This document shows positions 21,720-63,299 of a stretch of 64,000 nucleotides of DNA, piece after piece. This DNA is from Pelomyxa schiedti (lineage: Eukaryota > Protista > Evosea): contig JAHLWZ010000829.1 of assembly GCA_020536535.1 (NCBI GenBank), positions 1 to 64,000 on the forward strand. Direction: 5' to 3'. Both the position numbers and the translations under genes were made by a program. Under the pieces are notes generated by a model. That model was not told where the DNA came from. It saw only the letters and a program-made list of their open reading frames with translations, and made no database searches. How positions within the stretch are numbered: the stretch's first letter is position 1; each line of letters starts with the position of its first letter.

Positions 21720-22074
21720 TCGTCAACGCAAAAAGAAGTTTGATGGTTCAAGACAAGTTCACTCCAGAGTTTTTGATGATGGTGTTCCTGGGACTTACAA
21801 TACTGTTGTTGTTCTGATTCTGAGACTCACACTGCGGGCTAAAAGCTCCAGAAGCTGCGTACTTGTTCTTGTAGCTCTTGGGACAAGCTGGTTTGAAGAG
21901 CTTCCTCATACGGTTGGACACCTTCGACACCACTGAGCTGGGAGTGAGTGTGTTTAGAAGTTCTCTGCGTCAAAGAGATCATAAGGCTTGGTTGTTGTAT
22001 TTGTGTGGTGTGGGCAAAGGATGTTGGTTTGAAGTTTAGAAAAGCTAAGTCCACTGACTGTGCTGTCTGGGCAC

Positions 22075-27130: not shown

Positions 27131-29235
27131 TCAGTCATCCCACTTGAGGGTGCCCACAACAAGAAAACGCGAGGGTAAATCTCCAGGACACGGGGCCAGT
27201 ACTGTGATCGTGCGTCTCTCAAAGTCAATGTCATTGCTGTTGTTTTGTTGTGTGGTTTTAGTGTTGTTGCTTTGTGCTTGTGGTTTTGCTGGATGACAAA
27301 TATGGGTGAAGCAGGCGTGGAGGGAAAGGTACGGTACATACACGTAGAGGAAGCCAGCTACGTTCGATGTTAGAAGTGCAGAAGGGTCGGTACACATCAC
27401 AACTCCAAGTAGGGAGTGCACAAGCTCCGATGTCGGGGTAACTTCGACTAGCCTTACGGGGTCTTGTGAAGGTGCTTGTCCAATGGGGAGTGCAGATGGC
27501 GGTGCTGCTGGCCCTCCTCCAATGCGGAAAAGAGTTACGTCACTAACCGTACCCAAGTGAGGTTAGAAGCAGTCTGGGACATGCAAAAAAAAACCTGAAG
27601 TTGAGGATAGTAGAATGCGGACACAAATCACCATTAACCCCGTAGTAGTATTCTTTGATTCTGTTTCCTCTGGCCTTTCTCCGTTCTGTTGTATTTCTAC
27701 TAACAACCTGAGCACAGCGGTTTGTGATTGGCAAAGGAATGGATGCACTTACCCCACCAGATTTTGGAATTTTCATCACACTGACGGTGCTAGACTGGGG
27801 AGGATATCTAACAGATATATCATGGAAAAGACGCTCATCTTCAATAACGGCAATGATATCTGGTCTGAAAGTATCTGATGTGTGTTGGTGACTGCTGTTC
27901 CGGACGGGAAAGTACCAAAGTCCTGAAATAGTATTGCTTCGCCTTCATCGTCAATCCAACCACAGGTGTTAACAATAATCCCAGAATGGCGAACTAAACG
28001 GAATAAGCGAGCGAAGACTGGATAAGGTTACCGATTGGATCTGCTTTGAATTTTTCATCCACAGCTCTTGCCAAGTTGGTAACACATTGTTTGTATAGAA
28101 CTGGATTCTTTTCTGAGGAAAGATTTCCGTAGTAGTAAGCTATTGGAGGAGTACTGCAACCAGAGCCACTTAGACCTTCAGATGGGTGTGGCGGCTTTTC
28201 GACCCCAACAGCTGCTACAACACCAGGTACCTAAAGGTTCACACCATCAGTTAGATTCCATGAGTGAAAAAACTAACACATACTGTTATTGAACCTTGAC
28301 CGACATCGAGATCAACAAAAATTGGCATGTGGCCTAGTCTTGTAGCATATGCCAGTAGAATTCTAGTTATTGTACTTTTTCCACAGTCCACTGGCCCACA
28401 CAAAAAAATCTGTTTACAATCTTAGAATATGTAAATCAAGAAGGGGGTTAGGAAACAAAATAAAAAGCGCATAAGCTTATAAGATATGCCACTAGACAGA
28501 CACAGCATTTCCAAACACAGATACAGACTCAGCACTCTTTCCACACCGTACCGTTGGGCCGCGAGCACTGCCGCCCTGCGGTTCATCAAACGGCGTTGGG
28601 CGGCCGACCATCGCGCCCGAAATGGCGGCGTCGGCGTCCCTGGCCCTGAGCCTCAGCGCCTCGAGCTTCGAGTGCAGCACCGCGTAGGCCGGCATCGGCG
28701 TGTCGCCCGCGACGTAGGCGTGGCTCGCGGCGCCGCGGAGCTGCAGGCTGCAGCCGCGCCACGTGAAGACCGCGCACTTGGCGCCCGGCGTGAAGTGGTA
28801 CTCGCCGCGCGGCGCCAGCTCCGTGCCGAAGCACTCGCACGAGCCCGACACCACCGTAAGCGTGGCGCCGCCGCCCTCCCAGTCGACTTGGAATCGCAGC
28901 TACATTCAAATGGTTTTTGTGTTTGTGGTGAGATAGTTGTGGTTGGTGGTGGTGGGATGGCTGGCGGTTGGTTTTGTTTTGTTTTGTTTTGTTTTGTTTT
29001 GTTTTGTTTTGTTTGGGTTGCCATGTGGCACTGCATCAGCGTTGCTGTTTGTTTGTTTGTTGGTTGGTTGGTTGGTTGGTTGGTTGGTTGGTTGGTTGGT
29101 TGGTTGGTTGGTTGGTTGGTTGAGTGGTTGTGACCTGGAAGGAGGGGGCGGCAGCACCTCTTTTTCAGCAGCTAGGTCCCAAATCCGTGGCGTGGACGAA
29201 GACGAGGAAGTGGCCGTGGGAGTTGCCGTATCCAT
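27131..29235 (-). CDS. CLP1: Polyribonucleotide 5'-hydroxyl kinase CLP1
   Basis: [31 protein letters not shown]-loop [17 protein letters not shown] and a C-terminal [12 protein letters not shown]. Confidence 0.93.
28971..29121. repeat. Compound microsatellite (GTTTT)n / (GTTT)n / (TTGG)n in CLP1 intron 1
   Basis: Direct reading; it lies inside the 258-nt intron 28900-29157. Confidence 0.95.
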
Positions 29236-29335: not shown

Positions 29336-32242
29336 CTACCAGCACTTCAAGCCATTGACAGAACACAGGAGTCCCTCTTTTGGAGCACCCAAGCCCTGAT
29401 GGACCAGTATCTCGAACGTTGTATTGTGAATACACCCACAAACCTCCTTCCATCTGGTTTTAAGCCTGGCTCCAAATAAAAAAAAGCAAAAAGTGTTTCC
29501 ATTGTGATTGTTCTGGTGAAAACAAAGAGGATGTGCATTTTCCATAGTGTTGTGGGCAGGATACAAAATTGTACAGTTTTTGGGTTCGTGGGTAAATCAG
29601 TCGTCTATTAGAAGGTATGATAGTATGTTGATAAGATCGTTGTGGAACAGTGCCGCCATGTGTGCACCTGGCAGAAAAAGTACAACATTAGATAATTCGA
29701 AGGCAGTGCCGGGGAAAGTACCTTCTCGTACAAGGTCCACAAGGTTGGAAGGTGTGACACAGGACATCTCTGCTGAGGCGTACTTGAGCTCCGTATCTAC
29801 GCGGAGGTACTTGATTCGGGGGTGAGAGGCAACCTCGGACATTACAAGGGAGGAGGCGTGGCTTGATGCCAGAAGAAGAGCGTTGATAAGAGGCTGAATC
29901 CACTGTACAACTCCCCACTTGTTAACCTTGGTGGATTCGAGTGTATCAGGGGGTGCAGTGCCCGTTCCGAGCGAAAGTACCACGTAGTGAGTAGCCTTGG
30001 GGTACTTCACCTTGGCGGAGCTTTTAAAAACATAATTAACGGGAATTCTAGAAAGTAAGCAACAGACACCTGTATGCAGCAAGCACAGGATTGTTGCATC
30101 CAATTCCACCGTCGATGTGTGTATGGCCAGTTATGGGGTCTTGTTGCGGTTTAAAGTATGTAGGGGCCGATGATGTCATGCGGCACAGTACAAGCTTTTC
30201 CATTTCGGCATCTTCTTCCTCCCAACTTTTCCAAAATTTCATTTGGTTCATAGTCATGTCAAATGAAGTGATAAGAACATTGGTGGTCACGTTTCCAAAC
30301 TTGTGGTGATTCGGTCCCATAAGTTCAAGCATCTTAGTCTCCAAAGGTTGGTGCTTAAACTGTGGTCCAAGTAGTACACTACCTCTAGGAGTAAACACGA
30401 GAGGCCCACAATCCGTGTACAAGGAAAGTGCATCAGCAGCACTGAGGTGTGGATCCGGGTGTGTAAGCATACAGGCAAGCAGTCCTCCCGTACTTGTACC
30501 AGCAATAATGTCAAACAAATCGCTGATGCGTTTCCCTGTGTAATATTCTATCAAGGCCAGAATAATCCCAGGAATAATTCCTCGAATTCCACCTCCGTCA
30601 ATGGAAAGAATGCGAACAGTATTGCGCCGTTCCCAAGGACATGAACCCAAAGTAGGCTTTTGACAACGGGTTAGTGCACAATAAAGGTTACAAATTAGAA
30701 GAGCACCAGAGGATCCCATGTGATGCGAATATGTAATAGTCCTTTCCGCTTATGCTTAAGTAGCAACCATTCATCAACATCAACTCCAGGTTCAGCGGTA
30801 AATTCACACTCTCTGGATTAGGAAAAAAAGTGGGTCAAGATAATAATTTCTGGGATGCAAACCCTTCAAAATCATCCTGGACCCCGAGTGGATAATTTTT
30901 GGTGAGAAGAACAAGGGTAGAACAGAAGGTACCGCGGAAACTGTATCTCGATCCCACACTTTAAATCTCAAGTCCATGGTCTTTGCTGGGTGGCAGAACA
31001 GTTGAAACTCGGTGTTCCATACAGGCTCAAGTGTTTTCGGAATTACGTGAGTCATTAGTCCTCTGTCTGACCGGGATTTCTATCTGGAATTTACATTCTT
31101 AATCTATTTTGAGTGACAATACCTGGAAACTTGGAATAAGAACCTCAGTGTATCTATTAGAAAGATGGTTTTGGTGAATAATTAATAAATTGCAACAAGC
31201 AAAAACTCAACGGGTCGGAAGTTCCTGTTGTGTCCATGGGTACCAGGTCAGATGCTTCCACAATTGTGAGGGTAAATAGGCACGGCTTACGAGGTGTTGG
31301 TGGAAGAAGTACAGGCTCAGGTGTTATGTGGGTCACAGCTGCAGCGACAGAAGCAACAGCCGTTACGGCATCAGTGGAAGCAATGGCCGCTGAAGCCACA
31401 AAAGCGGCCATTGTATCAAACTTCGAGGCTTTTAAATGATCTCTCCTTCTTTTATTGGTTAAAGCCTCTACAGCCGTCGCTGTAGCAGATGCCGTCATTG
31501 AAGACGAGGCACAAGCAGCAAGCAATTCTGCTTCCAAGAGCGATAGTGGTGAATCAGATGGAGGAAGAGATGATTCTGTGGTAGACAACCCGGACGGTTT
31601 CATTTCTGGGGAGCCTGCCTTTTTCTCCCTGCCCAAATTAGGTGAAGACGCAGACCGTTTATCACGCTGCTTGGAAAGATGACTATGAGGAGTTTTGTGT
31701 TTTGTGGGCTCCTCCGGTGTGGGTTGTAGGGTGGAATCATCTTGGGAGCTTCTTTGCTCCGCAGGAATTTTTTCAGTGCCCTCGCCCGCGTTGTCACCCG
31801 GTTCCTTTTCCTTTGTTTCCAGGGCTTGGTCACTTTCTGGCGGTGCGGATTTGTCTCTGTGCTTCTCCTTCCTATCCTTGCTTCTTTTGTGCGAATGCCC
31901 GCGCGACCTTTCACGCCCAGTGCCCTGCGTTTCCTCCGGTTGCGGACTCGCATCAGCGGTTGTACTCGCGGTTGTAGCTGCAGCTGTCGTGGTGGGCGCG
32001 CCGGCGCCGTCAATTTGGGAGCTGCCACCGGTTGCCTTTTCCTTTTCCTCGGTTGGTGCGGCCGACTCGCTCTGGTCCCGTTGCTCTGCGGCAGGTTCGC
32101 CCTCCTTGGCCCGCGAGCGGTGCCTGTGGCGGTGACGTTCGCGCGGGGTATCTGTCGAGGCCTCGCCGGTGGAGGAAGAAGGATCCGCAACAGGTGCGAC
32201 GTTATTCACGGCGACCTTGTTGTCGTTGTCGTCACCGTCCAT
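29336..32242 (-). CDS. C2-domain plus patatin-like phospholipase with a long low-complexity N-terminus
   Basis: C2 motifs [27 protein letters not shown] and FKVWDRD; patatin motifs DGGGIRG, GTSTG (nucleophile) and DGG. Start may be 32242 or a nearby upstream ATG; 3' end approximate. Confidence 0.85.
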
Positions 32243-33505
32243 CGCGAGTCCGTTCGGCCGCAGGTGGTTATTGTTCTTCCTAGGAATTAACGAAAGTTCG
32301 CTTTTTTTCGTACCCCTTTCACATGTTGACATCTCCGGTATCCTTCCAGGGAACACACAACCCGAAAAGGGTTCTTAGTCGATGACGAAAGTCAGCAACA
32401 ACTTTATGGTTTAGTGGTCCATGTTAGGGGTCGTCGTCAACACCAAGAAGCAATAAGAAAAGAATCGTCGAAAGCAAGCAATGTGCCGTGTTCGGCGGTT
32501 CACCAGCCTCCTCCTCCCATACTGGCGTGCTGCCCCGCGCACAAGAGAGAACGACGCACACACGAAACACCGAAACACACCCGTCTTGCCGTAAAGGAAA
32601 AAAAAAGAAATTGGGCACAAGTGAGGGATAAAAAAAAGATTGTTCTCTTCACAATTACATCCCATGTCACCAAGCCCTGCAACAAACAAAAACCAACCCA
32701 GAATTCTCTTGTGAGCCATAGATGGACCAAAACTGTTAGTACCAGGGGTTGGCATCTGTTATAATGGGTGCCAACACACAACACACTCATCTGTTGTTAT
32801 TATTTATTTTGTGTGTGATTGCATCCGTTATAGTGGGTGTAACCATCTTGAATAAATATGGGAAAGAAAAAACAAAGAAAAAAAAGAAAGAAAAAACCTA
32901 CCAGAAGAGCCAAAGCAGGTTCCACGTCGTCCATGGCGGCAGCACCATCCCCATCGTCGTCTAGTTCCCTTTGTTGTTCGTGTATTTTTGGTTGTGGCTT
33001 CTCCGCATCGGACCTGAATGCCTAGGCATTTAGAGGAAGGAAAAATTGACGTGGCGGTTATTTTCCTGCAGTTGCTCCCAAGAATAGACACTGGATATTG
33101 ATCGGTCTGCTCTAGTTTCTTGGTCAGACCAGTGCTCCCAGAGGAGAGTTTTTGGGATTTGCCCAACCTCTGAGAGCCCGTTGGATGAGAAATAGCCCTC
33201 AGGAAGACCTCACCTGAACCAGTCAGATGATCAAATCACATCAATTCTTTGCAGGACATTCTTCATCCTAATCCGTGCGGGAGCCCGCGTCCTATCCTAA
33301 TCTCGAGTAATCTTCCAGCAGAACCATTCAAATTTCATGAAGTCATTATTGAATTGTGATTTATGAAGAAAGAAGGGTTTTTCTCCCCCAAATTCTTTGT
33401 TATTTTTTTATTTTGGTTATCACCAAAAAAAACAACTCAGAGAACACCCCACTATTTCCATACGTTCACAGGTGGCACCACAATACGTTGTCCAAGCAAG
33501 AGTCC

Positions 33506-34819
33506 TTATGATGACTTTTCCTTTGGAACAATGTTCTTGGCTTGGAGTTCCTTGTCGGATGTGTTGACAGCGGCGTGGAGTGTTGGCTTGGCCGAAACTC
33601 TGTAGGCACCGACAACAACAGCGTGATCTCTCTCGTAGGGCTCCAGTGAGATTTGTTCCAGTGGTTTGAATTGCTCTTGTTGGAGTTTCTTCACCTCATT
33701 GGCAAATACCAAATCAGCTGGGGCAGTAGAGTCGATGCAATTGGCCTGGGTGTATGGTCACGTGCAAAGCCAATTAAAACAGGAACACCAACCTTGATGG
33801 AGATGATGAAATGTCCACCGTTCTTCAAGAAGTTGTGGGCGTTAATAGCAAGGATACGAGCTTGGTCGGGTTGGGCTACATCCTCAAAGATGCAATCAAC
33901 CATGTCAACCAACATGCGGTACTAAACACTCTTGAGTTTGAAGAAAAACAACCAAAAAAAAAACCTTGTGTGGATGGCGGGCATCCTCAATGATGGGGAT
34001 AATGTTGGTTCTCTTCTTGGCTACATTGATAAGATCTCGGCCTGATCTGTGAGAGAATTCGACGGCATAAACTACTCCGGTCTAGTATTACGTAAGGCGT
34101 TAAAAGGTAGAGGCAAGGTGTATCATACCGGACCAACAATATCTGACACGTGGCTTACAGTTGTTCCGGAGGCAGCACCAAGGTAAAGTACCTTGGAGCC
34201 GATGGTGACCCATGTATTATCAATACCACCAATAATGGCAGCAGCTAACTTGGATCGGAAGGGATTCCAGACTCTGTATTCCTTCTTCTCTCCATTCTAC
34301 ATAAAGTGAGATTACTGTTTGTACAGAAAGCATAAGACAACACGACACAAAACCCCCGACAAAAACAAAAACAAAAACGAAATCGAAAAGCACCTCCTCG
34401 ACGGCAATACGCTTCTCTCCATAGACTGACTCCCCAGGGACAAGGTTGAGCGTGACGAGGTTGTCTTCCTTCCCCTTGGCGATGTAAATTCCCTCGTGCC
34501 TGTGCTTTACAATCACCACCTTCAAACCGCCGCCGCCCCTCCCTCCCCTGCCCCCGCGGCCACCTCTTCCGCCGCGGCCGCCGCCTCCTCGCCCGCCTCC
34601 GCGTCCTCCCCTCCCTCCGCGGTCACCGCCGCCTCCTCTGCCGCCAAATCCTCCCCTGCCGCCGCCAAATCCTCCTCTGCCGCCGCGAGGTGCTCCGCGT
34701 CCTGTGAAAAAGGGAAAAAAAGGGGGGGAAAAAAACCGACGTAAGTGAGGGCGAACAGCGTGGATGGTGTGTGGGTGTATGCGTGGCTGCAACCCGGAAA
34801 GACGACACTCACCGCTCAT
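33506..34819 (-). CDS. FBL: Fibrillarin (rRNA 2'-O-methyltransferase, Nop1)
   Basis: RGG-rich GAR domain, [52 protein letters not shown] and [13 protein letters not shown]. Confidence 0.97.
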
Positions 34820-35231
34820 CTCTTGCGTGTAGCTTTATCTGATCTGCGTGGGATTGAAAACTTAATGATTATTTCTCGCTTTGCCGAGAGCCCTCAATTT
34901 GCCGCACGTCAGCAACTGCACAATTGCAAAGTAATAGATCTTGCTGGAGTTCTGTGTGGTCTTTCCATCCCAGCAGCTCTGGAAGAGGGTGAGCTGAGAG
35001 GTACATCATGCATCCTGAGGTTCTCTCAAGCAATCGTTCTCAGAGCAGCATCAGTCTCCTTTCATCAGTTACCGAAAACATCATTCCGAAAAACTCTTCT
35101 CGGATACGCTTTGAGAAATCGAGAGTTCGCCTCGCGTTTGGCCAACAATCAACAGGCCAGGGCGAAAAAGAAAGAAAAAAAAAAGAAGTCTCAGTCTCCC
35201 TTTGGCTCCCATTGACTGAGGAGGAAGCACA

Positions 35232-40827: not shown

Positions 40828-42582
40828 ATGAGTGACGGCGTAATCGTACAGCGCAAGAAGTCCAAGGTAACTCACATCCGAGCCCCCACGTTGTATTCGT
40901 TCTCCACTACTAGCATCAACAAACACACAACACTCACCTTGCGGCGTTACAGAACACGAGCAGCAGCAGCCCGACTACTTCCAAGTCCACTGCTACGACT
41001 TCCAGCACATCGCCGGCGGCTGCCCCGGCCCCTGCGGCGGGGAGCCGGTGGCGCACGTGGTGGGTGCGGACGGCAGCCACGCTCGTGATGCTGGGCGTGT
41101 TCTTCTTGGTGATTTACGTGGGCCACTTTGCGTGCGTGGCGCTGATTTTGCTGTGTGAGGCTCTCGTGTTCCAGGAAATCATGAACTTGGCCAACTGCTT
41201 AAGGAGACAGCACCTGAACTAGCCGGATTATCATCTGGTATGCCTACTTTTCCCCTGAACATATTGTTCATTTTGTGGCCTCCTCAAATGAATGAAGGTA
41301 TGTGTTTTTTGTGGCACAGTATTTCCTCCTTGGACTTGTTCTGAAAAGCTACTTTGAAGAGCAGCTGGTTGTGTATCCCGTAATCAACATCTTGTCACAC
41401 CATCACAATATCATTTGCTTCAGTCTGTACCTTGTTGGCAAGTTTTATGTCATCCTCCTTTCGCCTTGACAATAATTAGCCTTTGTTTCCTTTGTGATGA
41501 GTCTGGAAGCAAAAAAATACAAAGCACAATTTGTCCAGTATGGATGGTCACACCTCGTTGTCTTGGCTATCCTCATTCAAGCAAATTTCTGGGTTTACAA
41601 TGTCTTCCAAGGGCTAATCTGGTAAGCCCATTCATTCCACCCAAGCGTACTTAAAACTAAAGGCTCATATTGCCTGCATCTTTGATAATATGCAATGATA
41701 TCTGGGCTTTCATAACTGGGTTCTTCTTTGGACACACTCCTCTCATTCAGCTCAGCCCAAAGAAAACATGGGAGGGATTTATTGGCGGCTTTGTTGCTAC
41801 TGTTATACTTGGTTACATATTGAGTGCCTTATTTATACATCCATGGATGATCTGTCCGAAGACGGCAAATATACATTCCACAATGTATATCTTCTAAACT
41901 GTGAACAGGATCTATTCACATGGTCAGTTCAGTGTGAAATGTCTCCTATATTCTCATTGCACCATTATGCTCTCCCAGCGTTCTTGATTAAGGCCTTTTC
42001 ATTTGTAAGCCTCTCTTTCTCCTATCCCTAAATTGAAGTACTTCAGGTTGGTCTGAACTGGACTCACTTGGTTTGTTATCCCTTCCAACTACATACGTTC
42101 CTTATGGCAATTTTCGGGTATGAAAATGCCAACACAGAGTGCCTCCATTTAATTAAGTCCCAGGTCCCTTGTTGCTCCCTATGGTGGTTTCTTTGCCAGT
42201 GGCTTCAAACGCGCTTTCAAAATCAAGGTGACTTATTCATGTCTCATGCGATCCCTAATGAGTCTCATTTTTTTTTTGTTTTTTTTAACTCAGGACTTTG
42301 ATGAGAAGATTCCCGGGCACGGCGGTGTTACAGACCGCATGGATTGCATGTTCCTAATGGGAACATTCTCCTATCTGTATCTGACCACCTTCATTCTGAC
42401 TCCAGACACAGTGATGACAGTGTTCTCCAAAGTATTATTCCCGTTCCTGTTACAATTCAGGCACTTCTTTTTCTCACCACCGTGCTTTCCTATTATAGGC
42501 CATGGCACTCGGAGACGTTGAGCAAGTTCAGCTTTACGAAAAACTCCACGGTCTTCTTGTTACAAAGGGGCTCTTGGCGTAA
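40828..42582 (+). CDS. CDS1: Phosphatidate cytidylyltransferase (CDP-diacylglycerol synthase)
   Basis: [76 protein letters not shown]. Confidence 0.95.
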
Positions 42583-42672
42583 TCCTCACCTCCAACTTGG
42601 TACCCCAAGTTAGCATAAGAATGCTTTTAAACAACACGTTCCTTGCTTTTTCGCCACATTGGGGTGCAGGAG

Positions 42673-45600
42673 ATGAAGGGCGCCGCGTCGAACTTCGCGA
42701 ATTTGGCTGCGGCACTTGCGCCCGACAGCGAACGAGGTACAGCACTGCGCGACGCCCTGCGGGTGTTGGGCGGCGACGGTGACGCAACAGCAACTGCGGC
42801 CGCTGCGCCCTGCTTGTCGCTGGCCACAGTGTCGAGGTGCCACGCCGCCGCGACCAAGTTGGCGCAGGTGGTGACGGCGGCGGCCGAGGCGCCGGAGAGG
42901 CCCGTGCCGGTTACCTTAAGCAAGGCGATTGTGGGAGCGGGCACGAGGGCACTGTGCATTGAGGCCGTTGCTAACAGCTTGACCCAGGTCCAATTCATTT
43001 CAAGGAAAAAGGGTGTGTGGAGGCTACTCTCAAACATTTTTTTTTTATTTGCTCATTATGTTGATGTGTGACACATGATTAGAATTCACAGAGGAGGTGC
43101 TGAGAGAAATGATGAGGTGTTTCGTTGTGAAGTGCGAGTACCTGTCAATGCAACTGACAGACTCATGGGATACAATCAAAATCGAGCCCCATGTCTCAGT
43201 GGTAAACTAAACAAGAATTTGCTATTGTCATACTTTGGCGAGGATCGAGACTAACTTGACTCTCATACATACATAAGTGCAGATTCAAAACAAAGCAGAG
43301 CACATCAAAGGACTTGTAAACAGGTCCAAGGGACTTGCCTCTGTCCGAAACAGTGATGGGCACACAGCCCTCCATTTGGCGGCAATAATTGACAGGCCTG
43401 ATTGCGCCAGAATTTTGGCACAGTTCCCAGTGCCTGTTCAGGCCACCCGTGGTTCGTTACTTTGCTTATTTTCTGTTCTAACTGATTTAATTCTCTCGTG
43501 GTCGTTACATATTTTCATTGAATTGTGTTGACAGACAACAACGGGAAGACAGCCGCGATTCTTGCCGCGGAATGTGATTCACTGGAAACATTCTCCACGT
43601 TGATGGAAGAAACGATGACGGAGTCAATGATGAACACTGTGTGACAACTCCCTTATTGCTTATCAAAAAATCCCCTGATCAACGGACCGATCCGAAACAG
43701 CTTCTTTGGACTGTTGTCAAGGACTCGAGCACACGATGTTTCCAGCTCCTGGCCAATGTTCCAAACATCTTTGACACATGGCGAGGAACGCACAATGAAA
43801 CACTTCTTCACGTGGCTGCACTCTTTGGGTGCAGAATGATGGTTGATAAGATCATCTCTGCCGGGTGTGTTCATTTTTGCCAATCCCACCAAATTCTCAC
43901 GCGAACAAACACAGAGTTGACAGGTCAATCTGTGATTCACATGGAAACACAGCACTTCATTACGTGTCCAAATCTGGGAATGCAATGTGCCTTGGGAAGG
44001 TTCATTTCCATTTCTCATTTGGTTTTATAATCATCGTTTCTTTGATGCCGCTGATGACAACAAAACAACAGTTGATTGAACATGGGATCAATAAGGACGC
44101 ACGAAATGACAGTGGAGAGACAGCCATTGTTGTTGCCGTGAAGGAAAACTCTCACATCACGCGCTTGTTCATTGACAGAGAGGTGGACTTGCTCATCCCT
44201 GACAGTGAGTAGTTATAAGTATCCTAATGTAATTATTGTGAATTAATATGCTTCTTCTTTCCCTTTCCCTCATCCCCCCTGTTACACAATGATAGATGAA
44301 GGGAACACACCACTTTCCGTGGCGATTGGGACAAACAACCTTCCCGTGGTTCAAGCACTCGTTGGTACTAACAAGATAGATCCTGAGTCCCTTAGGAAAG
44401 GGCTTAATCTTGCAGTTGGGATGGGAAACCTTCCAACCGTGGAGGCTCTTGTCGCATCCAAGGCAACTGATACCAGTATCCTCAGCAGTGGCCTCCTTTC
44501 AGCTGTGAAATACTGTGCGTGTGTGCTCACGAAGACTCTGCCCTTCCAACACACCCTTTCTGCATCCTCATCTGCCCTTCACTCATTCACACAAACCAAC
44601 CCAAAAAAAAAAAAAAAAACAGGTGGAAGAAGCGATCTGACAACAGGATGCTTCCAAAATGGGATTCAAATCATGAAGTTCCTTTCGGCGAGTGGAGGTG
44701 ATATCAATACAAGGGACCCAGATGGGTTCACTCCCATTTATTTAGCTGCCAGTTCTGCCTATACACCCACCCGGTCAGCCCTTGTTTCAGCTGTTCTTGA
44801 TTTGTATGGCATCCTTCTTCGGTTCTTTCTTTTTCATGATAGAACAAACCCTACAGAGGAGGAAATCCAAATCAAGCAGCACCCACCGTTGCATCCTCAC
44901 CACAAAATGCAGAAACACCTTTTATTGCTGTAATGAAACATTCCGATCTTGTTTGTAGTGAACTGATCTTGGGAAAAGGAGCAAAATTAACCAAGTAACC
45001 AATCATCACTACATTCATCCACCAACACTTTTTCCTCAAAAAATTTCCTCAGATATGAGGCCAACTATGGACTCTTCTCAGCAATCAGATACTGTATGCC
45101 GTCACTGCAATAACTGCTTTTCATAATTGTACAATAGGTACTCAAACTACAAGTGCCACCACACCAGAGTTATTTGAGAAATGGTTTCAAATGATGAAGA
45201 CCATGGTCAACTGTGGTGCAGACATCAATTCAACTGATGACAAAGGGTGTTCTCCAATTGCCTTGGCTCTGTGCTCTTCAGAGCCCAGGATTGTCTCTGC
45301 TGTTCTTGACTTGTATGTCTGTTTTATTCAGTCTTTTTTTTTTTCCTGACCCATCTATTCCGCAAAGTGGTGCGAACCCAAATTTGCCGTCAATTCCAGT
45401 CTCCTCGTTTACGAGTGAGTCTCCTCTTATTATGGCTATTAAGCATAAAAACTCTGTGTTCTGTAATCTGCTCATGGATAAAGGAGCAACACTCAACTCG
45501 TATTTTTCACTTTATTCTTCTTCTTCTAACCGAGGAAGAACTGAAGCAAACTCCTCTGTCTCTGGGGAAACTATGCTACTACAAGCAATTAGATATCTAA

Positions 45601-47973
45601 AAAACCCTCGAGTTGTTGCGGAGTTGATTCGGGCTCAAGCCGATCCAAATACACCTGGGTTTCTACTCTAAGTGTTCATTGTTTGTAGTGATTCATTGTA
45701 GGGGACTGTGTAATGGCCTTCCCCTTATTGAGGCAGTAGACAACTTGGAATCATTGAGAATCCTTCTGTCTTGTCCTTCTATAGACATTGAGAAGACAGA
45801 TAGCAATGGCAACACCGCTTTGTTCAAAGCTCTGGAGATGCAGCAACAAGATTGCGTGGAATTGCTGATATCAAAAGGTTGGCTACATTGATGCAACGGC
45901 TTTCTGATAACAAAAATAGGAGGCAATAAACTTACAGCGGCCCAACAAGCCCTACGCACTCGGTGTGCCAAGGCAATGGCCCTTCTTCTCAAAAAGTTTT
46001 CTTCCTCCCAGGTGAACTTCATTAACACCTCTTCTTAGTGGCTTTGATCCCAACTTTATTCTTCCAACTGGGCAATCTCTACTCAGCACCGCCATTTCTC
46101 AGTACTTCCCTGATGAAATGGTTACAGTGATACTTTCTGCTGGTGCCGATCCAATGCTTCCATCCCTGTGAGCATGTTATGTGTCATACTTTGTATAACT
46201 TTAAAAATTCAGTGATGCAACACTGGCAGCATTGGAACACAATTCCTCTTCTGATATATCTTGGTTGGTGCTTTCGAGAGTGGACAAAGACAAAGCCCTA
46301 AATTTTTGTGTAAAAACACAACAGCACAACTGTATAACGAAGTTGGTTAGCTCCAAGAGTACGCATTCTAGATATTGTTTTTCTTCTAACATAAAATTCT
46401 TTTTTCTTTTGGTTTATTTCTTATGACAGTGTTCACCTATGCAGAGTTGCTGCTTAAAGCCCTTGAAAAAGATGACGTAAATCTTCTGGAACTCTTTTTG
46501 AAATGGTTTGACTATTCTACAAATTGTTTTAACATGTTTTCCAAGTCCACTGTCACCAGATGTCCATTTCCCAGATGGCAGTACACCTCTCATTTATGCT
46601 ATCAACAAACAAAACGAAAATGCGGTAAAACTTCTCTTAAAACATAGTGCCTCTGTTTCTTTTTCTGGAAGGTGTGTAATATATATACGTTTCAAGATTT
46701 TGGCTGAAGTACTTCTAGGGATGGATCAGATCCACACACAAGAGCTGAAGGTGGTACGAATAAATCTATTGCAAGAATGATCGAATCAAGTACGGACATA
46801 ACATCCTTGTGCATTTCTTTTGGTGAATAACTGAACCTTACAGGTATCTTCTTGGAGGAAATAGGACCCATTATTGTTGCAGATACTGGTTCTTGGATGA
46901 CCAGGTCTGGCTGGTGCGGTAGTGGCTCACCAAGAACCACGTTTCCCACTATTGTGGGACGCAAAAAGATTGACAACTTTCCACTGAGGTTCTTTGGTAC
47001 GGTTTCCCTTCCCTCCTGATTTCATTTTCTCTGAAGAACCCGAAACTAATCAATTCCTTCAGTTGGTGAGGAATGTGGGGCGTGCACGAGGCCTGTATCT
47101 TTACGCAGTGTAAACAACTTTGATTGCATGGAGAGGGTGTACGGCCACATCATGGATGAAAGCGGCCGGCATCCCATAGTTCTGGCTCGAGGAGTATCCG
47201 AAGGGAAGCCACAACTCGAGAAGACAACGCAAATCATGTTCGAATCCCTTGATGTGCCGGCGCTTTTCATGGCGTCTCAGCCGACACTGGCACTTTATTC
47301 TACAGGCCGGCTAAATGGCTTGGTACTCGACTGCGGATACCAATTATCAGAAGCGGTGCCAATCTTCGAGGGCTTCCCGCTGCGGCACAACATTCAGAGA
47401 CTCGAGTTTGGCGGATTTGATATCGACAACTTGTTTTTGCACTACATGCCAACGCCGAGATACTTGACTAAAGCAACGGTCATCAAAGAGCGTTATGGGT
47501 ACATAGCCTCCAACCCCGCCACCGAGCACGCGGACGCCCACAATTACGAGCTTCCAGACGGCAGTATGGTGCATATTGGGCAGCAGTCCTTCGAGTTCCC
47601 CGAGGCCCTGTTCTCGCCAATCCTCGCCGGCCTAGGCTCCCCGGGAATTCACGAGATCACACACACGAGCATCCAACAATGTGATGCAGATCTGAGGCCG
47701 GAATTGCTCAGCAACATAGTTCTAGCCGGCGGAACAGCGAAATTCCGCGGACTGGCGTCACGCCTGCAAGAGGAAATATCTGCGCTAGCGACAACACGAC
47801 GAAGAGTGAGTGTGAGAATGGCAACGACGCCCGATAATGATGACTGCTCACTGGCAGCGTGGGTTGGTGGGTCGATTATGGGATCGCTCCCTTCTTTACC
47901 AGAAATGTGGATGAGCAAGGAGGATTACGACGAACGTGGCCCTGCCCTGGTCCACAGGATATTCTTGTTATAA
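42673..47973 (+). CDS. Ankyrin-repeat array fused in frame to a C-terminal divergent actin-fold domain
   Basis: All GT-AG junctions traced by hand give one open frame. Ankyrin motifs (GHTALHLAA, GNTALH, GNTPL, GFTPIYLA, GSTPLIYAI) are followed by IIVADTGSWMTRSGW...PRTTFPTIVGR, QIMFESLDVPA, GLVLDCG, YELPDG, PEALFSP, NIVLAGGT, AWVGGSIM and WMSKEDYDERGPALVHR. Confidence 0.88.
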
Positions 47974-48182
47974 TTAATTAAGGTTCTAAACCAAATGGGT
48001 TCGAACTATGCACTACTACTAAAAACCATGGTTCCCAACTTCGGTTTTTTGTGTTTTACACTTTCGAAGGTTGCAACGAAAATTTTAAATGGCTGAATAA
48101 AAGAAAACACCAGACCGCCGATCCTGAGCGACGGTAACGAAAATGACAGCGTTCCGGTCCGTTGATTATTTTATTCGGCCAA

Positions 48183-50566
48183 ATGGCCACAGCCGAGTGT
48201 GGCGTGGAAACAATTATGAGGGTCGCGCGCCTCGTGTGGGAGTGCGTCGTGGTCCCAGGCTGGCTCACGGCCCCGCCGCACCACCCCGCGCCCCCTCCAG
48301 ACTCGGACGGCGCCCACGACTACGACGGCTCGCCGCAGCGGCGCGACGACCAGGCCCGCGGCGCCGCGCTGTACAGCGTGGGCTCCGGGCTGTTCCCCCT
48401 CGCCGCGCGGGCGTGCGCCGCGGCCGCCGCGCTGTTCCCCCGCTGGTCCACGAGGGTCAGGCTCGCGTGCGCCGCCCGCGCCCGCGCCGTCTCGTGCGTG
48501 GAGTGGATCGCGGGCAGGAGGCGCAGGGAGTGGGCCGCCTCTGACGACGCATGCTGCGCTGCTCTCGCGGCACCAAGGTTATGATTGCACTGTGGGATTT
48601 CTTTTATTTTGTAGGTTTTTTTTCATGTGGAATCTGTAATTTCATTTGCGTATTATACCGTTATTGTTGTTTTCATATTTTTTTCCCTATTTTGACTCAC
48701 TAAATGTAGCATAGAAATCAGAAGATGTGTTTGAGTGTGCTACTTGGCTTTCTCTGTGGTGGTCATGTGGATTTGGCTGAGAAATTGGTCGCGAGTGGTG
48801 GGTTGGGATCCAGTGAAAGGCCGTTGTTCAGGGCGGTGAGGTGGCCAGGGGCACCTGGATCAAACGAGGACATGGACATGAAGGAGAGCATCAGGGCCAG
48901 CGGCATCAGCAGCTTCCACCAGCTTTTTGGGTTCGGGGAAACTGATCCTTTCATGATCCATCTGTGCCGTGACATTGACACCAAAGTTGGGGCAGTGAAG
49001 TGGGTAATTGAGTGGGCTGGAACGAGGGAACCTTGGGAGGTTTTTCAGCTTGTGACAACTGCAATGAGGGCTGGGAATGCTGAGGTCACACAATGGCTGG
49101 TGACAACTTTCAACTTGGAGGAGAAGACGAGGGACCTAAGGATTGGGCTTGGTGGTATCTGTGGTTGCATGGAAATGGGGAGGTGCCCCATGCTGATTAG
49201 ATGGTGGACTGAGACTTTCTCATTTCCTCCAGGAGAAACAAGGGACAGTAATGTACTTGGCTTTACAGTGTCCAACCCACACAGTTCGGTGGAACTATGT
49301 CAATGGGTGATGAGGAACAGGGGCCTAACAGATCTTCAACGATTCTTTTTACAAGAAGCACAGAATCCACATACGTTCAGGTGGGCCATTGAAGAATTCC
49401 ACATTGTGCCAATGGAGGAACACCTCAACAATGCCTGCGAGATGATGGGTGATCTCGAAGTTGCAAAGTGGCTGGTTACTAACCAGTCTGTCAGGCCCAC
49501 TCATGAGACAGTTTTAAATGCACGCTCGTCCAGGAGAGAAAATGTGGAACTCGTGAAATGGCTCTCAACGTTGGTTGCATTGACACCTGCTAATTTGCAA
49601 AAAGCACTTGGGAGATCACTGCACCGCGGCAACACAGCCATTGCGGAGTGGCTTGAAAGCAATTTTCATGTGGTCTCGTTGGTGCAATCCACGCCCGGTT
49701 GTTACGGTGCAACTCTGCTTGAAGCTTGCCAAAGTGGTCGTGAAGAACTTGTGAAGTCATTAAATTGGTTGCTGAAACACATGGGAGAGACACGAGTGGA
49801 GGGGATCACGATTGAACAATGTATCAAAAAAGCAACGAGTGCAAAAGCGCTCCTTCTGCTTCTGCAGAACTTTCCCTGCCATTCACTACAAGAAGACAGG
49901 CGATCAGCTTTACTTATACGCCATGTGCCTGGTGGTCTCCCACTGCAGTACCCCTTACTTATCCATCTCCTTGATTCATTTATACTAAATGGGGATGTTT
50001 CTGACATTCAAGCACTTTACTCTTTGGTGCACTTTACAGTGGATGACGTCTTGATTTGCATCAATCGCCATTCCTCAATTACTGCCTCTTCCAGCAAGGT
50101 TGTCAAGTGGCTTGTGTTGCGTTTTGGGGCAGTGAACTTCAACAACAAGATATCCCCACTGATTCACAACTTGCTTTTTTCTTCTCCTTGTAAGGCACAC
50201 TGTGCAGAGTGGCTAATTGACACCCTTGGGGTCCCCCTGACTGAGGTGAGTTTTTTTAATCACACTGTTTTGCAACTCACTAAGTTCACACAGATTCTGA
50301 AGGTAAAAACACATTCAGTAATAAGTGTCGGCCTATCAACGTGGAAAAGGATAGTGGACAAGAACCCTTCTGTTTTTTGCACTGCAGACACAGTCAGAAA
50401 GCTATGTATGCACATTGTGACATCATCTGCAGCCATTGCACATTGGTCCATGCACAGGTGGTCACTTTCTCACGAGGAGATATGCCAATTGTGGTGCAGG
50501 GAAGCTCCTCTGGGAATTGCGCCCGACATGCAACTATGGGAGAAATTTGGGGGAAACCGTAATTGA
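48183..50566 (+). CDS. Orphan divergent ankyrin-like repeat protein, two exons (1.85-kb second exon)
   Basis: Exon 1 (to 48577) splices in frame to ORF 48725-50566. Recurrent G(N/D/H)xEVAxWL-type helices (GNAEVTQWLV, GDLEVAKWLV, GNTAIAEWLE, ENVELVKWLS). Confidence 0.6.
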
Positions 50567-60193: not shown

Positions 60194-60575
60194 CTGAGCT
60201 GCCGTTGACGTTGTTTATAGCTCACTACAACAATAAAATTTTGCATTTTTGCGACTTGTTTTGTTTAGAGCACCGAAGCTACAAGGACAGGTGATTTTGA
60301 TGAAACCCTTGCTCAAAAGGTACTTCGCAAACACATCCCTTTTTCTCTGTGATGGCAGTTGTTTGGGCTTTCTGTGGCTTGTTAGTTAGAGGTATTCGAG
60401 GATTCAGTGAAGAAAAAGAACCCCGTTGCTCTTCAACTTCAAAAAAATGTTTTTTTTTTTAGCTACAAAAAATGGAGTTACTTCCGCTCTGTTTCCTATG
60501 TATCATTCATTCCTTATCTTTCGTAACTCCATTGTTCCTCACGCTTGCCCAAGAGGTTGATTGAGGATAAGGCAC

Positions 60576-63299
60576 TCAGTGACCTCCGGAGGAGCCACTC
60601 CTGGTCTTGTGGTGCCTGCTGGAATCCGACTTGGTGTGAGGCCTCTTCTCCGAGGACGCCGGGGCGTCGTCGGCCGGCTCTGGCGACTTGGTGGACGACG
60701 CTGTCTCAGTGGCCGGGCTCGAGGCTGAACTCTTGGCCTTGCCTCCCTTTGCTTTGCTCGACGACGCCGCCGCGAGCTTCTCCTGAAGGACGTGCGTCAT
60801 TTCCACGTTCTCCTCCTCCAGCCTCTCGCTGAGTACGTTGAGTTGCTCGATGAAGGGAAGCGCCGATATCTTCTCAGCCAGAGCTCCGGCGGCTTCGTTT
60901 AGGACCTCTATATCGGTGGAGCTTCCATCCAAGTACTTTTGCCACCTTTGTGTGCATTTAGTTGGGGGCTACCTTGTTTCACATGCGAGGAGAGAGTTGT
61001 ACCTATGAAGGTCTTCGAGGTGTTGATCCAAGTTTCTTCGCAGCACTGCCAAGCCTCTTGTGTTGACTCTAAATTGCTCCTTGTGCTCATTCAGTTGATT
61101 CTCGGTCTTCTCCTTTTGTACAGTCTCCTTCTTGAGATTTGACTTTAATGACTCTACCTAAAAGGTATTTAGTATCCACTAGCCCCTTTGGTGGAAACGG
61201 CACCTCTGTTTCAACTTCCTGGAGATGCTCTTCCAACAAAGCTTTCTTTTCTACAAGAGATCGCGTCTTCTTTTCCTCAGTAGCGAGTTGTTCCGTCAGC
61301 ACCTTTTCACCACCTTCCTTTGCTTGGACGGCTTCAGTGAGTGAAGCCACCTTGTTTTGAGCTACTATTAACTCTTCCTTGACGGCCTTGAGTTCAGCAG
61401 CGAGTTTCTTGTTTTTGGCTTGTTCAGCATCACATAACTGTTGAATGGCTTCGATCTACAAGTAAGTGTCAGTAAGGTCCTTCAAGATACAGTAGTCGTA
61501 CTTGCTCAGCTAATTGATTATTCCTTTCCTCTAATGTTTGTGTTTTGGCGAGGAGATTATTTCTTTCTGCCTCCACAGCCATCAAGTTTTGCCGAAGGAG
61601 AGCTATTTCTCGTTCCTGAGTTACGAGTCAGCGAGCATCCATTCTTAAGAGCATACCTTCTCTTCCAAGACTCGTTGCTGTGCCAGGAATTGTTCACGGA
61701 GGGCAACTAATTCCTCATGGGTTGTGTCCCATTTCTTCTTCTCCTCTTCGATTTGGATGCTTTAAAGAATTATTTACAAAGTTTGCAGACTGTGAACCAA
61801 ACTTGGCCTGAGCTAAATTAGCCGTAAGGTCATAATTCATCTTCACAAGCTCATCTCTGCTCTTTTTCTCCAGTTCTCCTCTCTCTGTGACCTCATCAAG
61901 TTTATTGGCGATATCGTTCATTTGTTTTTTATTGGTTATGGCCGAGTGAAACAAGCTGGTGTAGAGAGCAAGAGCTCGATCATCAACCTAAACAATATTA
62001 GAAAATCATGGGTACAAGGTTAGCCTTACAGTTCCCTCAAGAATCTCATCAATATCCAACAGTCTTGAAATACCCATTTTTCTTTCTGCATGAGTCATTA
62101 CAAATTCCAACACGTCGCGGGTGTCCATCTGAGAAAGGATTACACGGCAAAGCTCAACCAAGTGATTAGTGTACAGCTAAAAGTTCCTCCCAGGTGTGTC
62201 CCAAAATATCTGGGTCATAATGGTGGCACAAGGCAGCAAAAGCGAGACCGTTTGAGAAGCTAACATAATCTCAGCAAAAGGGAATATAAAATAGGTAACA
62301 GCAAACCTGGTCCTGTAGTTGGTGATAGTAACTCCCGCGTAACTGTAAGTTTGGTGAGAAGGACAAACGCCTGTGAAAACATAAGACAAAGGAATTACCC
62401 AGCTGTTTGAGTCTTGACCCATTCCAACAGCATCTCCTCAGGACCTTAGGGCACAAGTAAGAGTTCATGAACCATCCACATAGACACGGATGCAAACCTG
62501 CTTTACCACTTCCAGTCCTTGTTGTAGAGGTAACAACTACATTCATTCGGAAACGGCGATAAAGAGTCCACAAAAGACCCAGAATGTTTCTCAAATCCTT
62601 ATGAGCATCAACAATGTCTATAAGTAACGGTAAGTTTAAAACAAATGAGACTACAAAAACGCCCAATGACAAGAGCAAAAACGGCACGCTGGAAAGCATA
62701 AAAGCAACTCTAACACCAACAAGAACAAAAGGGAAAATAAACTGTACTTTCAGCAGCATATCCACATTGTGCAGTATTAATCCCGGTCTCCCTCTCCAAG
62801 TGACGGAGAGCCAAATGGCAGTTTGTTACTTTTTGAATCCTTGTTTTTGGGCTGCTATCATAGCGCTCACGCATTTTACTTCCTGTGAGAAGCTCAAAGA
62901 AGTTGATGATGAGGATTCCGTCCTCGAGGTCAGTTCGTAAGTCGGTCACTGTCATTTGACGTTTTGCAAGAGTTTGAGCCATCCATCCAGTGAAGGCCTG
63001 TTTTAATTACGGGATTGAGAATGTACGACAATGAAATATGTTTAAGGCAATGTAACCTTCTCTTGGATGATTTGCCACTACATAGAGTTAGAATGAGTGA
63101 ATTCTTTGGTGTTAAGAGGTAACCTTCTCCTCTTTTCTCGTTTTAGTTGTCGTAGTTGCCTAAAGTGAGGAAACCAGAAAAGAAGAAAATTAAAAAAGTG
63201 AAAACAACCAAAGAGCCAAGAAAAAAATAATTACAAACTAGCTCGAACAGAAAGCAACAAAAAAAAGTGTCTTGAATGAATGAAAGGAAAGGTCACCAT
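60576..63299 (-). CDS. ctxA: Cortexillin (tandem CH actin-binding domain, coiled coil, C-terminal bundling region); ctxA/B/C paralog not resolved
   Basis: WQIIQEKAFTGW, ILGLLWTLYRRFR, LALYTSLFHSA, LEKKSRDELVK and KWQKY...ALPFIEQLNVLSERLEEEN are colinear with remembered Dictyostelium cortexillin I. Confidence 0.88.

What the first reader, a model, noticed from the sequence alone, without database searches (positions are those of the whole stretch)
42673..47973. Ankyrin-array plus actin fusion protein (POTE-like architecture, independently evolved)
Seen: intron 46790-46843 joins ...ARMIES to SIFLEEIGPIIVADTGSW, and intron 46997-47062 joins ...FPLRFF to VGEECG...MERVYGH. Both keep frame, so the 281-aa actin-like ORF at 47128 is really the end of a protein of well over 1,000 aa with a long ankyrin array. 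The actin part is divergent: phosphate loops DTGSWMTRSG and DCGYQLSE, a shortened DNase-I loop and a deletion in subdomain 4. Established: ankyrin-actin fusions are known as primate POTE-actins. Inference: a non-polymerising actin-fold adaptor or cytoskeletal regulator, probably undescribed in amoebae.
Basis: partly seen in the sequence, partly recalled or inferred. Interest (0 to 1): 0.85.

Follow-up and report, generated by a model that had tools for sequence, protein, structure and literature searches.

The report
Ankyrin-array protein ending in divergent actin
In the anaerobic amoeba Pelomyxa schiedti, one gene most likely encodes a long ankyrin-repeat scaffold joined to a degenerate actin-fold domain; this resembles primate POTE-actin but arose separately, is already in GenBank as 'actin 2', and is undescribed in every paper my searches reached.

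Summary
The window is Pelomyxa schiedti contig JAHLWZ010000829.1.

The public annotation already has the fused model: KAH3756240.1, 'actin 2', 1188 aa, 22 exons, 43165-47973. The ankyrin array covers aa 1-806, a linker and helix cover 807-841, and the actin fold covers 845-1188.

The actin domain folds confidently (pLDDT 92.7; TM 0.85 to solved actins). It is only about 40% identical to any actin. It carries G15W, D157Y, G158Q and H161E, a D-loop shortened by 5 residues, and 27 residues deleted from subdomains 2 and 4. Subdomains 1 and 3 are better kept.

Neither module has a close relative in about 5.8 billion proteins. The only other ankyrin+actin proteins found were primate POTE and one marine-metagenome ORF.

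No transcript evidence was reachable. An actin-only isoform starting at ATG 46777 cannot be excluded.

The function (a non-polymerising actin mimic tethered to an ankyrin scaffold) is inferred, not shown. This is a lineage-specific domain fusion of moderate interest.

The parts
42673..43012 (+). It is Ala-rich and GC-rich, and is not part of the public gene model.
   Evidence: Open frame with GC by codon position 0.62/0.59/0.75. Donor at 43013 scores 8.2, above all 21 leave-one-out donor scores. No Pfam hit. Only 90 nt downstream of the stop of the preceding gene at 42582. Unconfirmed.
43092..43201 (+). Candidate second exon of the extended model. The public model instead starts inside it, at ATG 43165, in another frame.
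   Evidence: Acceptor 43091 scores 6.1. GC by codon position is 0.47/0.31/0.64 in the extended frame. The downstream acceptor 43282 scores 7.8 against 3.5 for the annotated 43277.
43165..46671 (+). Exons 1-19 of the public model (aa 1-810): the ankyrin-repeat array.
   Evidence: Exact spliced mapping of P0121. Pfam Ank_2 E=5.8e-68 with 8 stretches, and Ank E=5.4e-44. 14 repeats score at or above the 18-point listing cut-off against the consensus, 10 of them above the 95% null value of 26. About 21 helical hairpins in the AlphaFold model, aa 71-804.
46672..46718 (+). 47-nt intron that shifts the last ankyrin exon into the actin frame. If it is retained, the ankyrin frame ends at TGA 46778-80.
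   Evidence: GTGTGT donor, the best-scoring donor in the gene (7.9; no decoy as good). The acceptor is weak (leave-one-out score -3.0). GC 0.32, like the other introns. CTGAA motif 15 nt from the 3' end.
46719..46789 (+). Exon 20 (aa 811-834): flexible linker and the start of a helix. It contains ATG 46777-79 (Met831), the only possible start for an actin-only product.
   Evidence: AlphaFold gives low confidence for 804-823 and a helix for 824-841. GC3 is 0.21, like the neighbouring ankyrin exons.
46790..46843 (+).
   Evidence: GTACGG...CTGAAC...TTACAG. Donor 4.7 and acceptor 5.4, typical for this gene.
46844..46996 (+). Exon 21 (aa 835-885): end of the helix, strand 1, first phosphate loop (DTGSW) and the shortened DNase-I loop.
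   Evidence: Pfam Actin E=1.3e-5, matching profile positions 6-40. There is no in-frame ATG before the loop; the open frame begins at 46831 and its first Met lies after GSW.
46997..47062 (+).
   Evidence: GTACGG...CTAATC...CTTCAG. Donor 4.5 and acceptor 4.8.
47063..47973 (+). Exon 22 (aa 886-1188 plus TAA 47971-73): the rest of the actin fold in one 911-nt exon.
   Evidence: Pfam Actin 1e-68. GC3 is 0.60 against 0.42 in the ankyrin part. AlphaFold pLDDT 92.7. Foldseek TM 0.85 to solved actins.

Best explanation
One Pelomyxa schiedti gene (43165-47973, possibly starting at 42673) encodes a single polypeptide of about 1,190-1,320 residues. It has three parts:
- an N-terminal solenoid of about 20 ankyrin repeats;
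- a linker of about 20 residues predicted with low confidence (so probably flexible), followed by an 18-residue helix;
- a C-terminal actin-fold domain.

Shown here: the domain order, the spliceable frame, the actin fold, and the pattern of divergence.

Inferred, function. The actin module keeps the overall fold and the better-conserved barbed-end half (subdomains 1 and 3, including the hydrophobic target-binding cleft). Several residues that hold and hydrolyse ATP are replaced (G15W, D157Y, G158Q, H161E, K336S). The pointed-end half is trimmed (D-loop and subdomains 2 and 4). It is therefore unlikely to be a normal self-polymerising ATPase. It more likely serves as an actin mimic. Through its barbed-end face it could dock onto actin-binding proteins or onto the pointed end of a filament. 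The ankyrin solenoid would bind other partners, so the protein would act as a tether or regulator.

Inferred, origin. An actin-derived gene copy was joined to the 3' end of an ankyrin gene. The sharp change in exon size (911 nt against 37-219 nt) and in GC3 (0.60 against 0.42) at the junction fits a composite origin. This happened independently of primate POTE-actin.
For: Gene model:
- The public model KAH3756240.1 is 100% identical to the window and fuses the modules.
- It came from Augustus refined with PASA/EVM and single-cell transcriptomes (PMC8887013).
- All 21 introns are GT-AG, 39-108 nt, with GC 0.37. The three junction introns score like the others.

Against a separate actin gene:
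- The exon with the first phosphate loop has no start codon of its own.
- The only candidate ATG (46777) overlaps the stop that the ankyrin frame would use (TGA 46778-80). That leaves no intergenic space, whereas neighbouring genes in the window are 213-1508 nt apart.

Structure:
- The actin domain alone gives pLDDT 92.7 and pTM 0.89, and TM 0.85 to solved actins.
- The full-length model shows helical hairpins up to residue 804, a low-confidence linker, a helix at 824-841, then the actin fold.

Divergence pattern:
- Key-residue table.
- Subdomains 1 and 3 are 42% and 49% identical to the actin consensus, with no deletion in subdomain 3. Subdomains 2 and 4 are 29% and 32% identical, with 27 residues deleted.
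- Cleft residues Y143, G146, G168, I345, L349 and M355 are kept.
- The intact 354-codon frame and conserved core argue against a pseudogene.
Against: - No transcript, peptide or orthologue supports the junction. Searches found no P. schiedti fragment or relative above 45% identity.
- More than one stop-free splice path exists, and gene predictors often merge neighbouring genes.
- Met831 lies 17 residues before the D11 equivalent, within the family's range (median 11). An actin-only product of about 358 aa is therefore plausible.
- GC3 and exon structure differ sharply between the modules. Two genes would show this too.
- Substitutions such as G15Y/F and D157Y also occur in other divergent actin-like proteins whose nucleotide binding is unknown, so loss of ATP binding is not proven.
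- The acceptor of the 47-nt intron is weak.
Confidence: 0.55

Rival explanations
1. Two products from one locus. The ankyrin protein either ends at TGA 46778-80 (47-nt intron retained) or is made as the fusion. In addition, an internal promoter drives an actin-only protein of about 358 aa, starting at ATG 46777 (M-I-E-S, then the 54-nt intron, then S-I-F-L-E-E...). In the extreme form, the fused model is just a merge of two adjacent genes by the predictor.
For: - ATG 46777 is in frame and has A at -3.
- It sits 17 residues before the D11 equivalent, inside the range seen in 57 family members.
- GC3 and exon size change abruptly between the modules.
- The top database hits include several obvious mis-merged tandem actins, which shows that such prediction errors are common.
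- The acceptor of the 47-nt intron is weak.
Against: - Stop and start would overlap (ATGA), leaving no room for a 3' end and a promoter. Other intergenic gaps in the window are 213-1508 nt.
- The 46672 donor is the best-scoring donor in the gene.
- Exon 20 has the composition of the ankyrin exons.
- The deposited annotation was refined with transcript assemblies.
Confidence: 0.2
2. The fusion is real, but the actin domain is still a working actin. It binds nucleotide and co-polymerises into filaments, carrying the ankyrin array along as a filament-attached scaffold. This would be closer to what is said of filactin, whose actin domain is near-conventional.
For: - D11, S14, Q137, D154, G156, K213, E214 and G301-G302-T303 are kept.
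- The fold is predicted with high confidence and superposes on G-actin.
- Longitudinal-contact residues E241, P243, D244, G245, D286, D288 and R290 are kept.
Against: - G15W, D157Y, G158Q, H161E, R210T, M305K and K336S change residues around the phosphates and the adenine.
- The D-loop is 5 residues shorter, and 202-205 plus other parts of subdomains 2 and 4 are deleted.
- Identity to actin is only about 40%, whereas filament-forming actins are far more conserved.
Confidence: 0.15
3. Artefact or dead gene: a chimeric join from single-cell whole-genome amplification, or a decaying actin pseudogene swept into the model.
For: The assembly comes from amplified single-cell DNA. Composition shifts near 47060.
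Against: - The two exons on either side of the composition shift encode consecutive parts of one actin fold, in frame.
- A chimeric join would have to create a working intron by chance.
- A pseudogene at 40% identity would not keep 354 codons open, nor fold at pLDDT 92.7.
Confidence: 0.04

Closest known systems
Primate POTE-actin proteins (POTEE, POTEF and relatives)
   Same: Same domain order: ankyrin repeats at the N-terminus and a complete actin domain at the C-terminus of one polypeptide. These are the only named proteins with Ank and Actin Pfam hits among the long actin-domain proteins found.
   Different: - POTE has about 5-7 ankyrin repeats, Cys-rich N-terminal repeats and a CCDC144C-like coiled coil (PF14915). 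Pelomyxa has about 20 repeats and no PF14915.
- The POTE actin is a retrotransposed, near-identical beta-actin (PMC8292509). The Pelomyxa domain is about 40% identical to actin, carries two introns and has altered nucleotide loops.
- The ankyrin parts share only repeat-level similarity.
- This is convergence, not membership.
Marine-metagenome Ank-coiled-coil-actin protein P0318 (Tara Oceans contig, locus L002 273-2426)
   Same: Ankyrin repeats followed by an actin domain in a single uninterrupted 717-aa ORF. The architecture therefore recurs outside primates.
   Different: It has only 2-3 ankyrin repeats and a long Ala/Glu-rich spacer. Its actin domain is much more conventional (Pfam 7e-107) and has insertions rather than deletions. 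There is no specific similarity to the Pelomyxa ankyrin part and only 36% identity in the actin part.
Other actin-domain fusions in Amoebozoa: Dictyostelium filactin; Sec23/24-trunk/vWA+actin proteins (e.g. Balamuthia P0298)
   Same: A complete actin domain embedded in a much larger protein from an amoebozoan (PMC2441452).
   Different: The partner domains differ and include no ankyrin array. In filactin the actin domain is described as highly homologous to conventional actin. In Balamuthia P0298 the actin domain lies ahead of the Sec23/24-like region rather than at the C-terminus.
Orphan actin-like proteins of protists (e.g. Blepharisma P0254, foraminiferan P0186)
   Same: Stand-alone divergent actin-fold proteins with an aromatic residue at G15 and Tyr at D157, and shortened D-loops.
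   Different: They are not fused to other domains, are only 31-38% identical to the Pelomyxa domain (less than conventional actin is), and have no known function.

Membership tests
Actin family (Pfam PF00022, actin/ASKHA fold) | Profile match above the curated threshold across the whole domain | tested here: met
   PF00022 E=7.4e-78, 262 bits against a cut-off of 27, on P0121. E=1e-68 on the last exon alone.
Actin family (Pfam PF00022, actin/ASKHA fold) | Four-subdomain actin fold | tested here: met
   AlphaFold pLDDT 92.7 and pTM 0.89. The top 50 Foldseek PDB matches have TM 0.81-0.86 and rmsd 2.0-3.3 A; almost all are actin chains or actin complexes.
Conventional (filament-forming) actin | Very high sequence conservation | tested here: not met
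   Best identity to any actin is 40-43%.
Conventional (filament-forming) actin | Canonical phosphate-binding loops (DNGSG, DSGDGVTH) and catalytic H161 | tested here: not met
   The loops read DTGSW and DCGYQLSE, i.e. G15W, D157Y, G158Q and H161E. Q137 and D154 are kept.
Conventional (filament-forming) actin | Full-length DNase-I loop and intact subdomains 2 and 4 for longitudinal contacts | tested here: not met
   The D-loop is 5 residues shorter. 13 residues are deleted in subdomain 2 and 14 in subdomain 4, including 203-205.
Conserved actin-related protein classes (Arp1-Arp11) | Orthology to one Arp class in a phylogeny with reference Arps | not tested
   No named Arp reference sequences could be obtained. 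Indirectly, the 60 best PDB sequence matches are all actins and none is an Arp.
POTE family | CCDC144C-like coiled coil (PF14915) between the ankyrin repeats and actin | tested here: not met
   PF14915 is on record for every POTE hit but not for P0121, and is absent from the Pfam scan.
POTE family | Actin module derived from a retrotransposed beta-actin (near-identical, intronless) | tested here: not met
   36-38% identity to the POTE actin domain. Two introns lie within the actin module. The origin of the POTE actin is taken from PMC8292509.
Ankyrin-repeat proteins | Multiple tandem 33-residue ankyrin repeats | tested here: met
   Ank_2 E=5.8e-68 with 8 stretches; Ank E=5.4e-44. 14 consensus-scoring repeats. 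About 21 helical hairpins in the model.
Filactin | Long N-terminal extension without ankyrin repeats, plus a near-conventional actin domain | tested here: not met
   The Pelomyxa N-terminal part is an ankyrin array and its actin domain is about 40% identical to actin. The description of filactin is from PMC2441452.

The most novel reading that the evidence does not exclude
A true single-chain ankyrin-solenoid/actin-fold protein that arose in the Pelomyxa lineage independently of POTE. Its actin module has lost ATPase and self-assembly, but keeps its barbed-end face. It would work as a built-in actin mimic, for example capping or anchoring filament pointed ends, or presenting an 'actin surface' to actin-binding proteins at sites chosen by the ankyrin array. 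That would be a natural case of convergent reuse of actin as a protein-interaction module.
Probability: 0.3. Interest if true: 0.6.

Novelty: new variant of a known kind. Interest (0 to 1): 0.4.

Why it matters
If the fusion is expressed as one protein, it would be one of very few independent inventions of an ankyrin-actin chimera. The others seen here are primate POTE-actin and one marine protist ORF.

It would also be the only one of these in which the actin module is strongly remodelled. It would then be a convenient natural test of which parts of actin are needed for functions other than polymerisation.

It also bears on the cytoskeleton of Archamoebae, a little-studied anaerobic lineage.

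On the practical side, the GenBank name 'actin 2' is misleading. The annotated N-terminus may also be about 136 residues too short.

Tried and rejected
1. Transcript evidence. I looked for P. schiedti protein fragments from run-level assemblies by searching with the actin part (candidate lengths 166-528 aa), with the full protein (653-2079 aa) and against all representatives. Only the deposited genome protein was found, so nothing bears on splicing.

2. Orthologues or paralogues that would show the fusion conserved or split. None was found for either module. The high-scoring 'relatives' P0122-P0126 are tandem-actin merges that score twice.

3. Exon 20 as a C-terminal ankyrin capping repeat, which would have tied it to the ankyrin gene. 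My hand-aligned consensus score is about 9-10, below the chance level of 14-26. AlphaFold shows residues 804-823 as low-confidence coil. Rejected.

4. GC-rich islands as promoter marks, to argue that the actin module lacks its own promoter. Dropped, because one such island is simply the RGG-repeat coding region of a fibrillarin-like gene, and some genes have no island.

5. A naive longest-open-path gene model. It retained introns and picked a wrong frame for exon 18-19. It was useful only to show that alternative open paths exist.

6. Names for divergent actin-like hits, to place the domain in an Arp class. The hits were mostly unnamed or generically named, so no Arp phylogeny was possible.

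7. Intramolecular docking of the 824-841 helix.


Full report
**What the window is.** A search with the 302-residue open actin piece (47065-47970) against 1.84 billion representative proteins returned one 100% identical protein, P0121. It is 1188 aa, with the match at residues 887-1188. The source names it KAH3756240.1, 'actin 2 [Pelomyxa schiedti]'. It lies on contig JAHLWZ010000829.1 of assembly GCA_020536535.1, at record positions 43165-47973. These equal the window coordinates. The organism is an anaerobic archamoeba. Its genome paper reports 7.43 introns per gene, 98.4% of them GT-AG, and gene models from Augustus refined by PASA/EVM with single-cell transcriptomes (PMC8887013).

**Check of the observation.**
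- Pfam finds ankyrin repeats on most open pieces from 43277 to 46777.
- It finds Actin at 1e-68 on the 281-aa ORF, and at 1.3e-5 on the small exon that carries the first phosphate loop.
They must be removed for the frame to continue.
- A third intron, 46672-46718 (47 nt), is also required.
- P0121 maps exactly onto 22 exons and 21 GT-AG introns of 39-108 nt with mean GC 0.37.
- In a leave-one-out weight-matrix test, the three junction introns score within the range of the other 18. The 46672 donor is the best in the gene, although its acceptor is weak.

**Anatomy of the protein.**
- Pfam gives Ank_2 at 5.8e-68 in eight stretches and Actin at 7.4e-78.
- A crude consensus scan finds 14 repeats at or above its 18-point listing cut-off, 10 of them above the 95% value of 26 from shuffled sequence.
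- A full-length AlphaFold model (mean pLDDT 72.6) shows about 21 helix-turn-helix hairpins from residue 71 to 804. A low-confidence stretch follows at 804-823, then a helix at 824-841, then the actin fold from 845.
- Modelled alone, with 59 homologues, the actin domain reaches pLDDT 92.7 and pTM 0.89. It superposes on solved actins at TM 0.81-0.86.
- By sequence, the 60 best PDB matches are all conventional actins at about 1e-73 to 1e-70. None is an Arp.

**How the actin module differs from actin.** It is 40-43% identical to the best of thousands of actins.
- Substitutions, in actin numbering: G15W, K18R, D157Y, G158Q, H161E, R210T, M305K, K336S.
- Kept: D11, G13, S14, Q137, D154, G156, K213, E214 and G301-G302-T303.
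- Deletions: the D-loop lacks 5 residues; subdomain 2 loses 13 in all; subdomain 4 loses 14, including residues 203-205.
- Subdomains 1 and 3 are 42% and 49% identical to the conventional consensus, with no deletion in subdomain 3. Subdomains 2 and 4 are 29% and 32% identical.
- The residues lining the barbed-end hydrophobic cleft are largely kept.
- An aromatic residue at position 15 and Tyr at 157 also occur in orphan actin-like proteins of ciliates and foraminifera. Those are less similar to the Pelomyxa domain than conventional actin is.

**Is the fusion real?** In favour:
- The deposited, transcript-refined model fuses the modules.
- The phosphate-loop exon (46844-46996) has no start codon. 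Its open frame begins at 46831, and the first Met comes after the loop.
- If the ankyrin gene ended separately, it would stop either at TGA 46778-80 or at TAA 46828-30. The only candidate actin start, ATG 46777, overlaps the first of these. That leaves no intergenic space, whereas the neighbouring genes are 213-1508 nt apart.
- A chimeric assembly join or a pseudogene is unlikely, because consecutive exons encode consecutive parts of a confidently folding domain.

Against:
- I could reach no RNA or peptide evidence.
- No relative of either module exceeds about 43% (actin part) or 25% (ankyrin part) identity, so there is no comparative test.
- More than one open splice path exists.
- The modules differ sharply in GC3 (0.42 against 0.58) and in exon size (37-219 nt against 911 nt).
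- Met831 at 46777 would give an actin-sized protein of about 358 aa, with an N-terminal length inside the family's range.

I put the single-polypeptide reading at roughly 0.8. An additional or alternative actin-only product stands at about 0.2.

**The N-terminus.** The donor at 43013 (score 8.2) and the acceptors at 43091 (6.1) and 43282 (7.8) outscore the annotated acceptor at 43277 (3.5). GC is highest at third codon positions in both upstream exons. That model gives 1324 aa. Against it, the start would lie only 90 nt after the preceding gene's stop, and the added 150 residues have no Pfam match.

**Mechanism (inferred).** The ankyrin solenoid is a generic protein-binding scaffold. Its nearest matches are only PP6-regulatory ANKRD52-type arrays and bacterial ankyrin proteins at 21-26% identity over most of the query. 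The actin module keeps the fold and the barbed-end half, but has altered nucleotide loops and a trimmed pointed-end half. The most economical reading is an actin mimic that no longer polymerises by itself. It could still be recognised through its barbed-end face by actin-binding proteins, or by the pointed end of a filament, and would so tether whatever the ankyrin array binds. The alternative, that it still binds nucleotide and co-polymerises, is not excluded.

**Comparison with known proteins.** Among long proteins with an actin domain, Ank plus Actin occurs only in primate POTE proteins and in one Tara Oceans ORF, P0318.
- POTE differs in its coiled coil (PF14915), its short ankyrin block and its retrotransposed, near-identical beta-actin (PMC8292509). 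Similarity between the ankyrin parts is at repeat level only. This is convergence, not membership.
- Actin fusions as a class are already known in Amoebozoa: filactin (PMC2441452) and Sec23/24-trunk or vWA plus actin proteins in Balamuthia and many environmental contigs.
- None of the P. schiedti papers I opened mentions this protein.

**Verdict.** This is a lineage-specific variant of a known kind of domain fusion. It is already deposited but undescribed, and is of moderate interest.

Noticed in passing
window 42673-43282: The public gene model may be truncated at its 5' end. Two upstream exons (42673-43012 and 43092-43201) with strong splice signals and coding-like GC3 would add about 136 residues. 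They use acceptor 43282 instead of the annotated 43277.
   Followed up: partly
window 46777-46780: ATGA overlap. The only possible start codon for an actin-only product shares bases with the stop codon that the ankyrin frame would reach if the 47-nt intron were retained.
   Followed up: partly
window 281-880, 5041-5920, 22041-22480, 28461-28980, 31781-32300, 34381-34840, 40861-41220, 42601-43040, 48101-48640, 60521-60920: Sharp GC-rich islands (GC 0.66-0.81, 360-880 nt, CpG not depleted) in a 45% GC background, several at or near the 5' ends of annotated genes. At least one (34381-34840) is simply coding sequence for an RGG repeat. The rest are unexplained.
   Followed up: partly
window 33506-34819 (-): The gene begins with a long Gly/Arg (RGG) repeat, followed by sequence that I recognise from memory as fibrillarin-like. 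The record lists no Pfam hit for it.
   Followed up: no
window 48551-50566 (+): The next gene downstream (622 aa, mostly one 1.8-kb exon) has only a faint Ank_4 hit. It shows a recurring motif of the type x-x-W-L-x-x-x-F about every 35-45 residues. It may be a divergent repeat protein distantly related to ankyrin arrays.
   Followed up: no
window 44605-44621: A run of 17 A inside intron 44515-44622, the longest intron of the gene (108 nt).
   Followed up: no
L002 273-2426 (Tara Oceans contig, ERZ908167): An uninterrupted 717-aa ORF with ankyrin repeats, an Ala/Glu-rich spacer and a fairly conventional actin domain that has insertions. This is another independent ankyrin-actin fusion, in an unidentified GC-rich marine organism (cluster of 6 sequences).
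   Followed up: partly
proteins P0298, P0155, P0301, P0306, P0308, P0311-P0314, P0321, P0322: A recurrent family of 950-1340-aa proteins combines an actin domain with Sec23/24-trunk and/or von Willebrand A domains. It occurs in Balamuthia mandrillaris, Anaeramoeba and many environmental contigs. I do not know of a description of it.
   Followed up: no
proteins P0122-P0126: The best-scoring 'relatives' of the actin part are gene models that contain two tandem or partly duplicated actin copies (fungi, a firefly, Aduncisulcus). They are most likely merged neighbouring genes, and their scores are inflated by double matches.
   Followed up: yes
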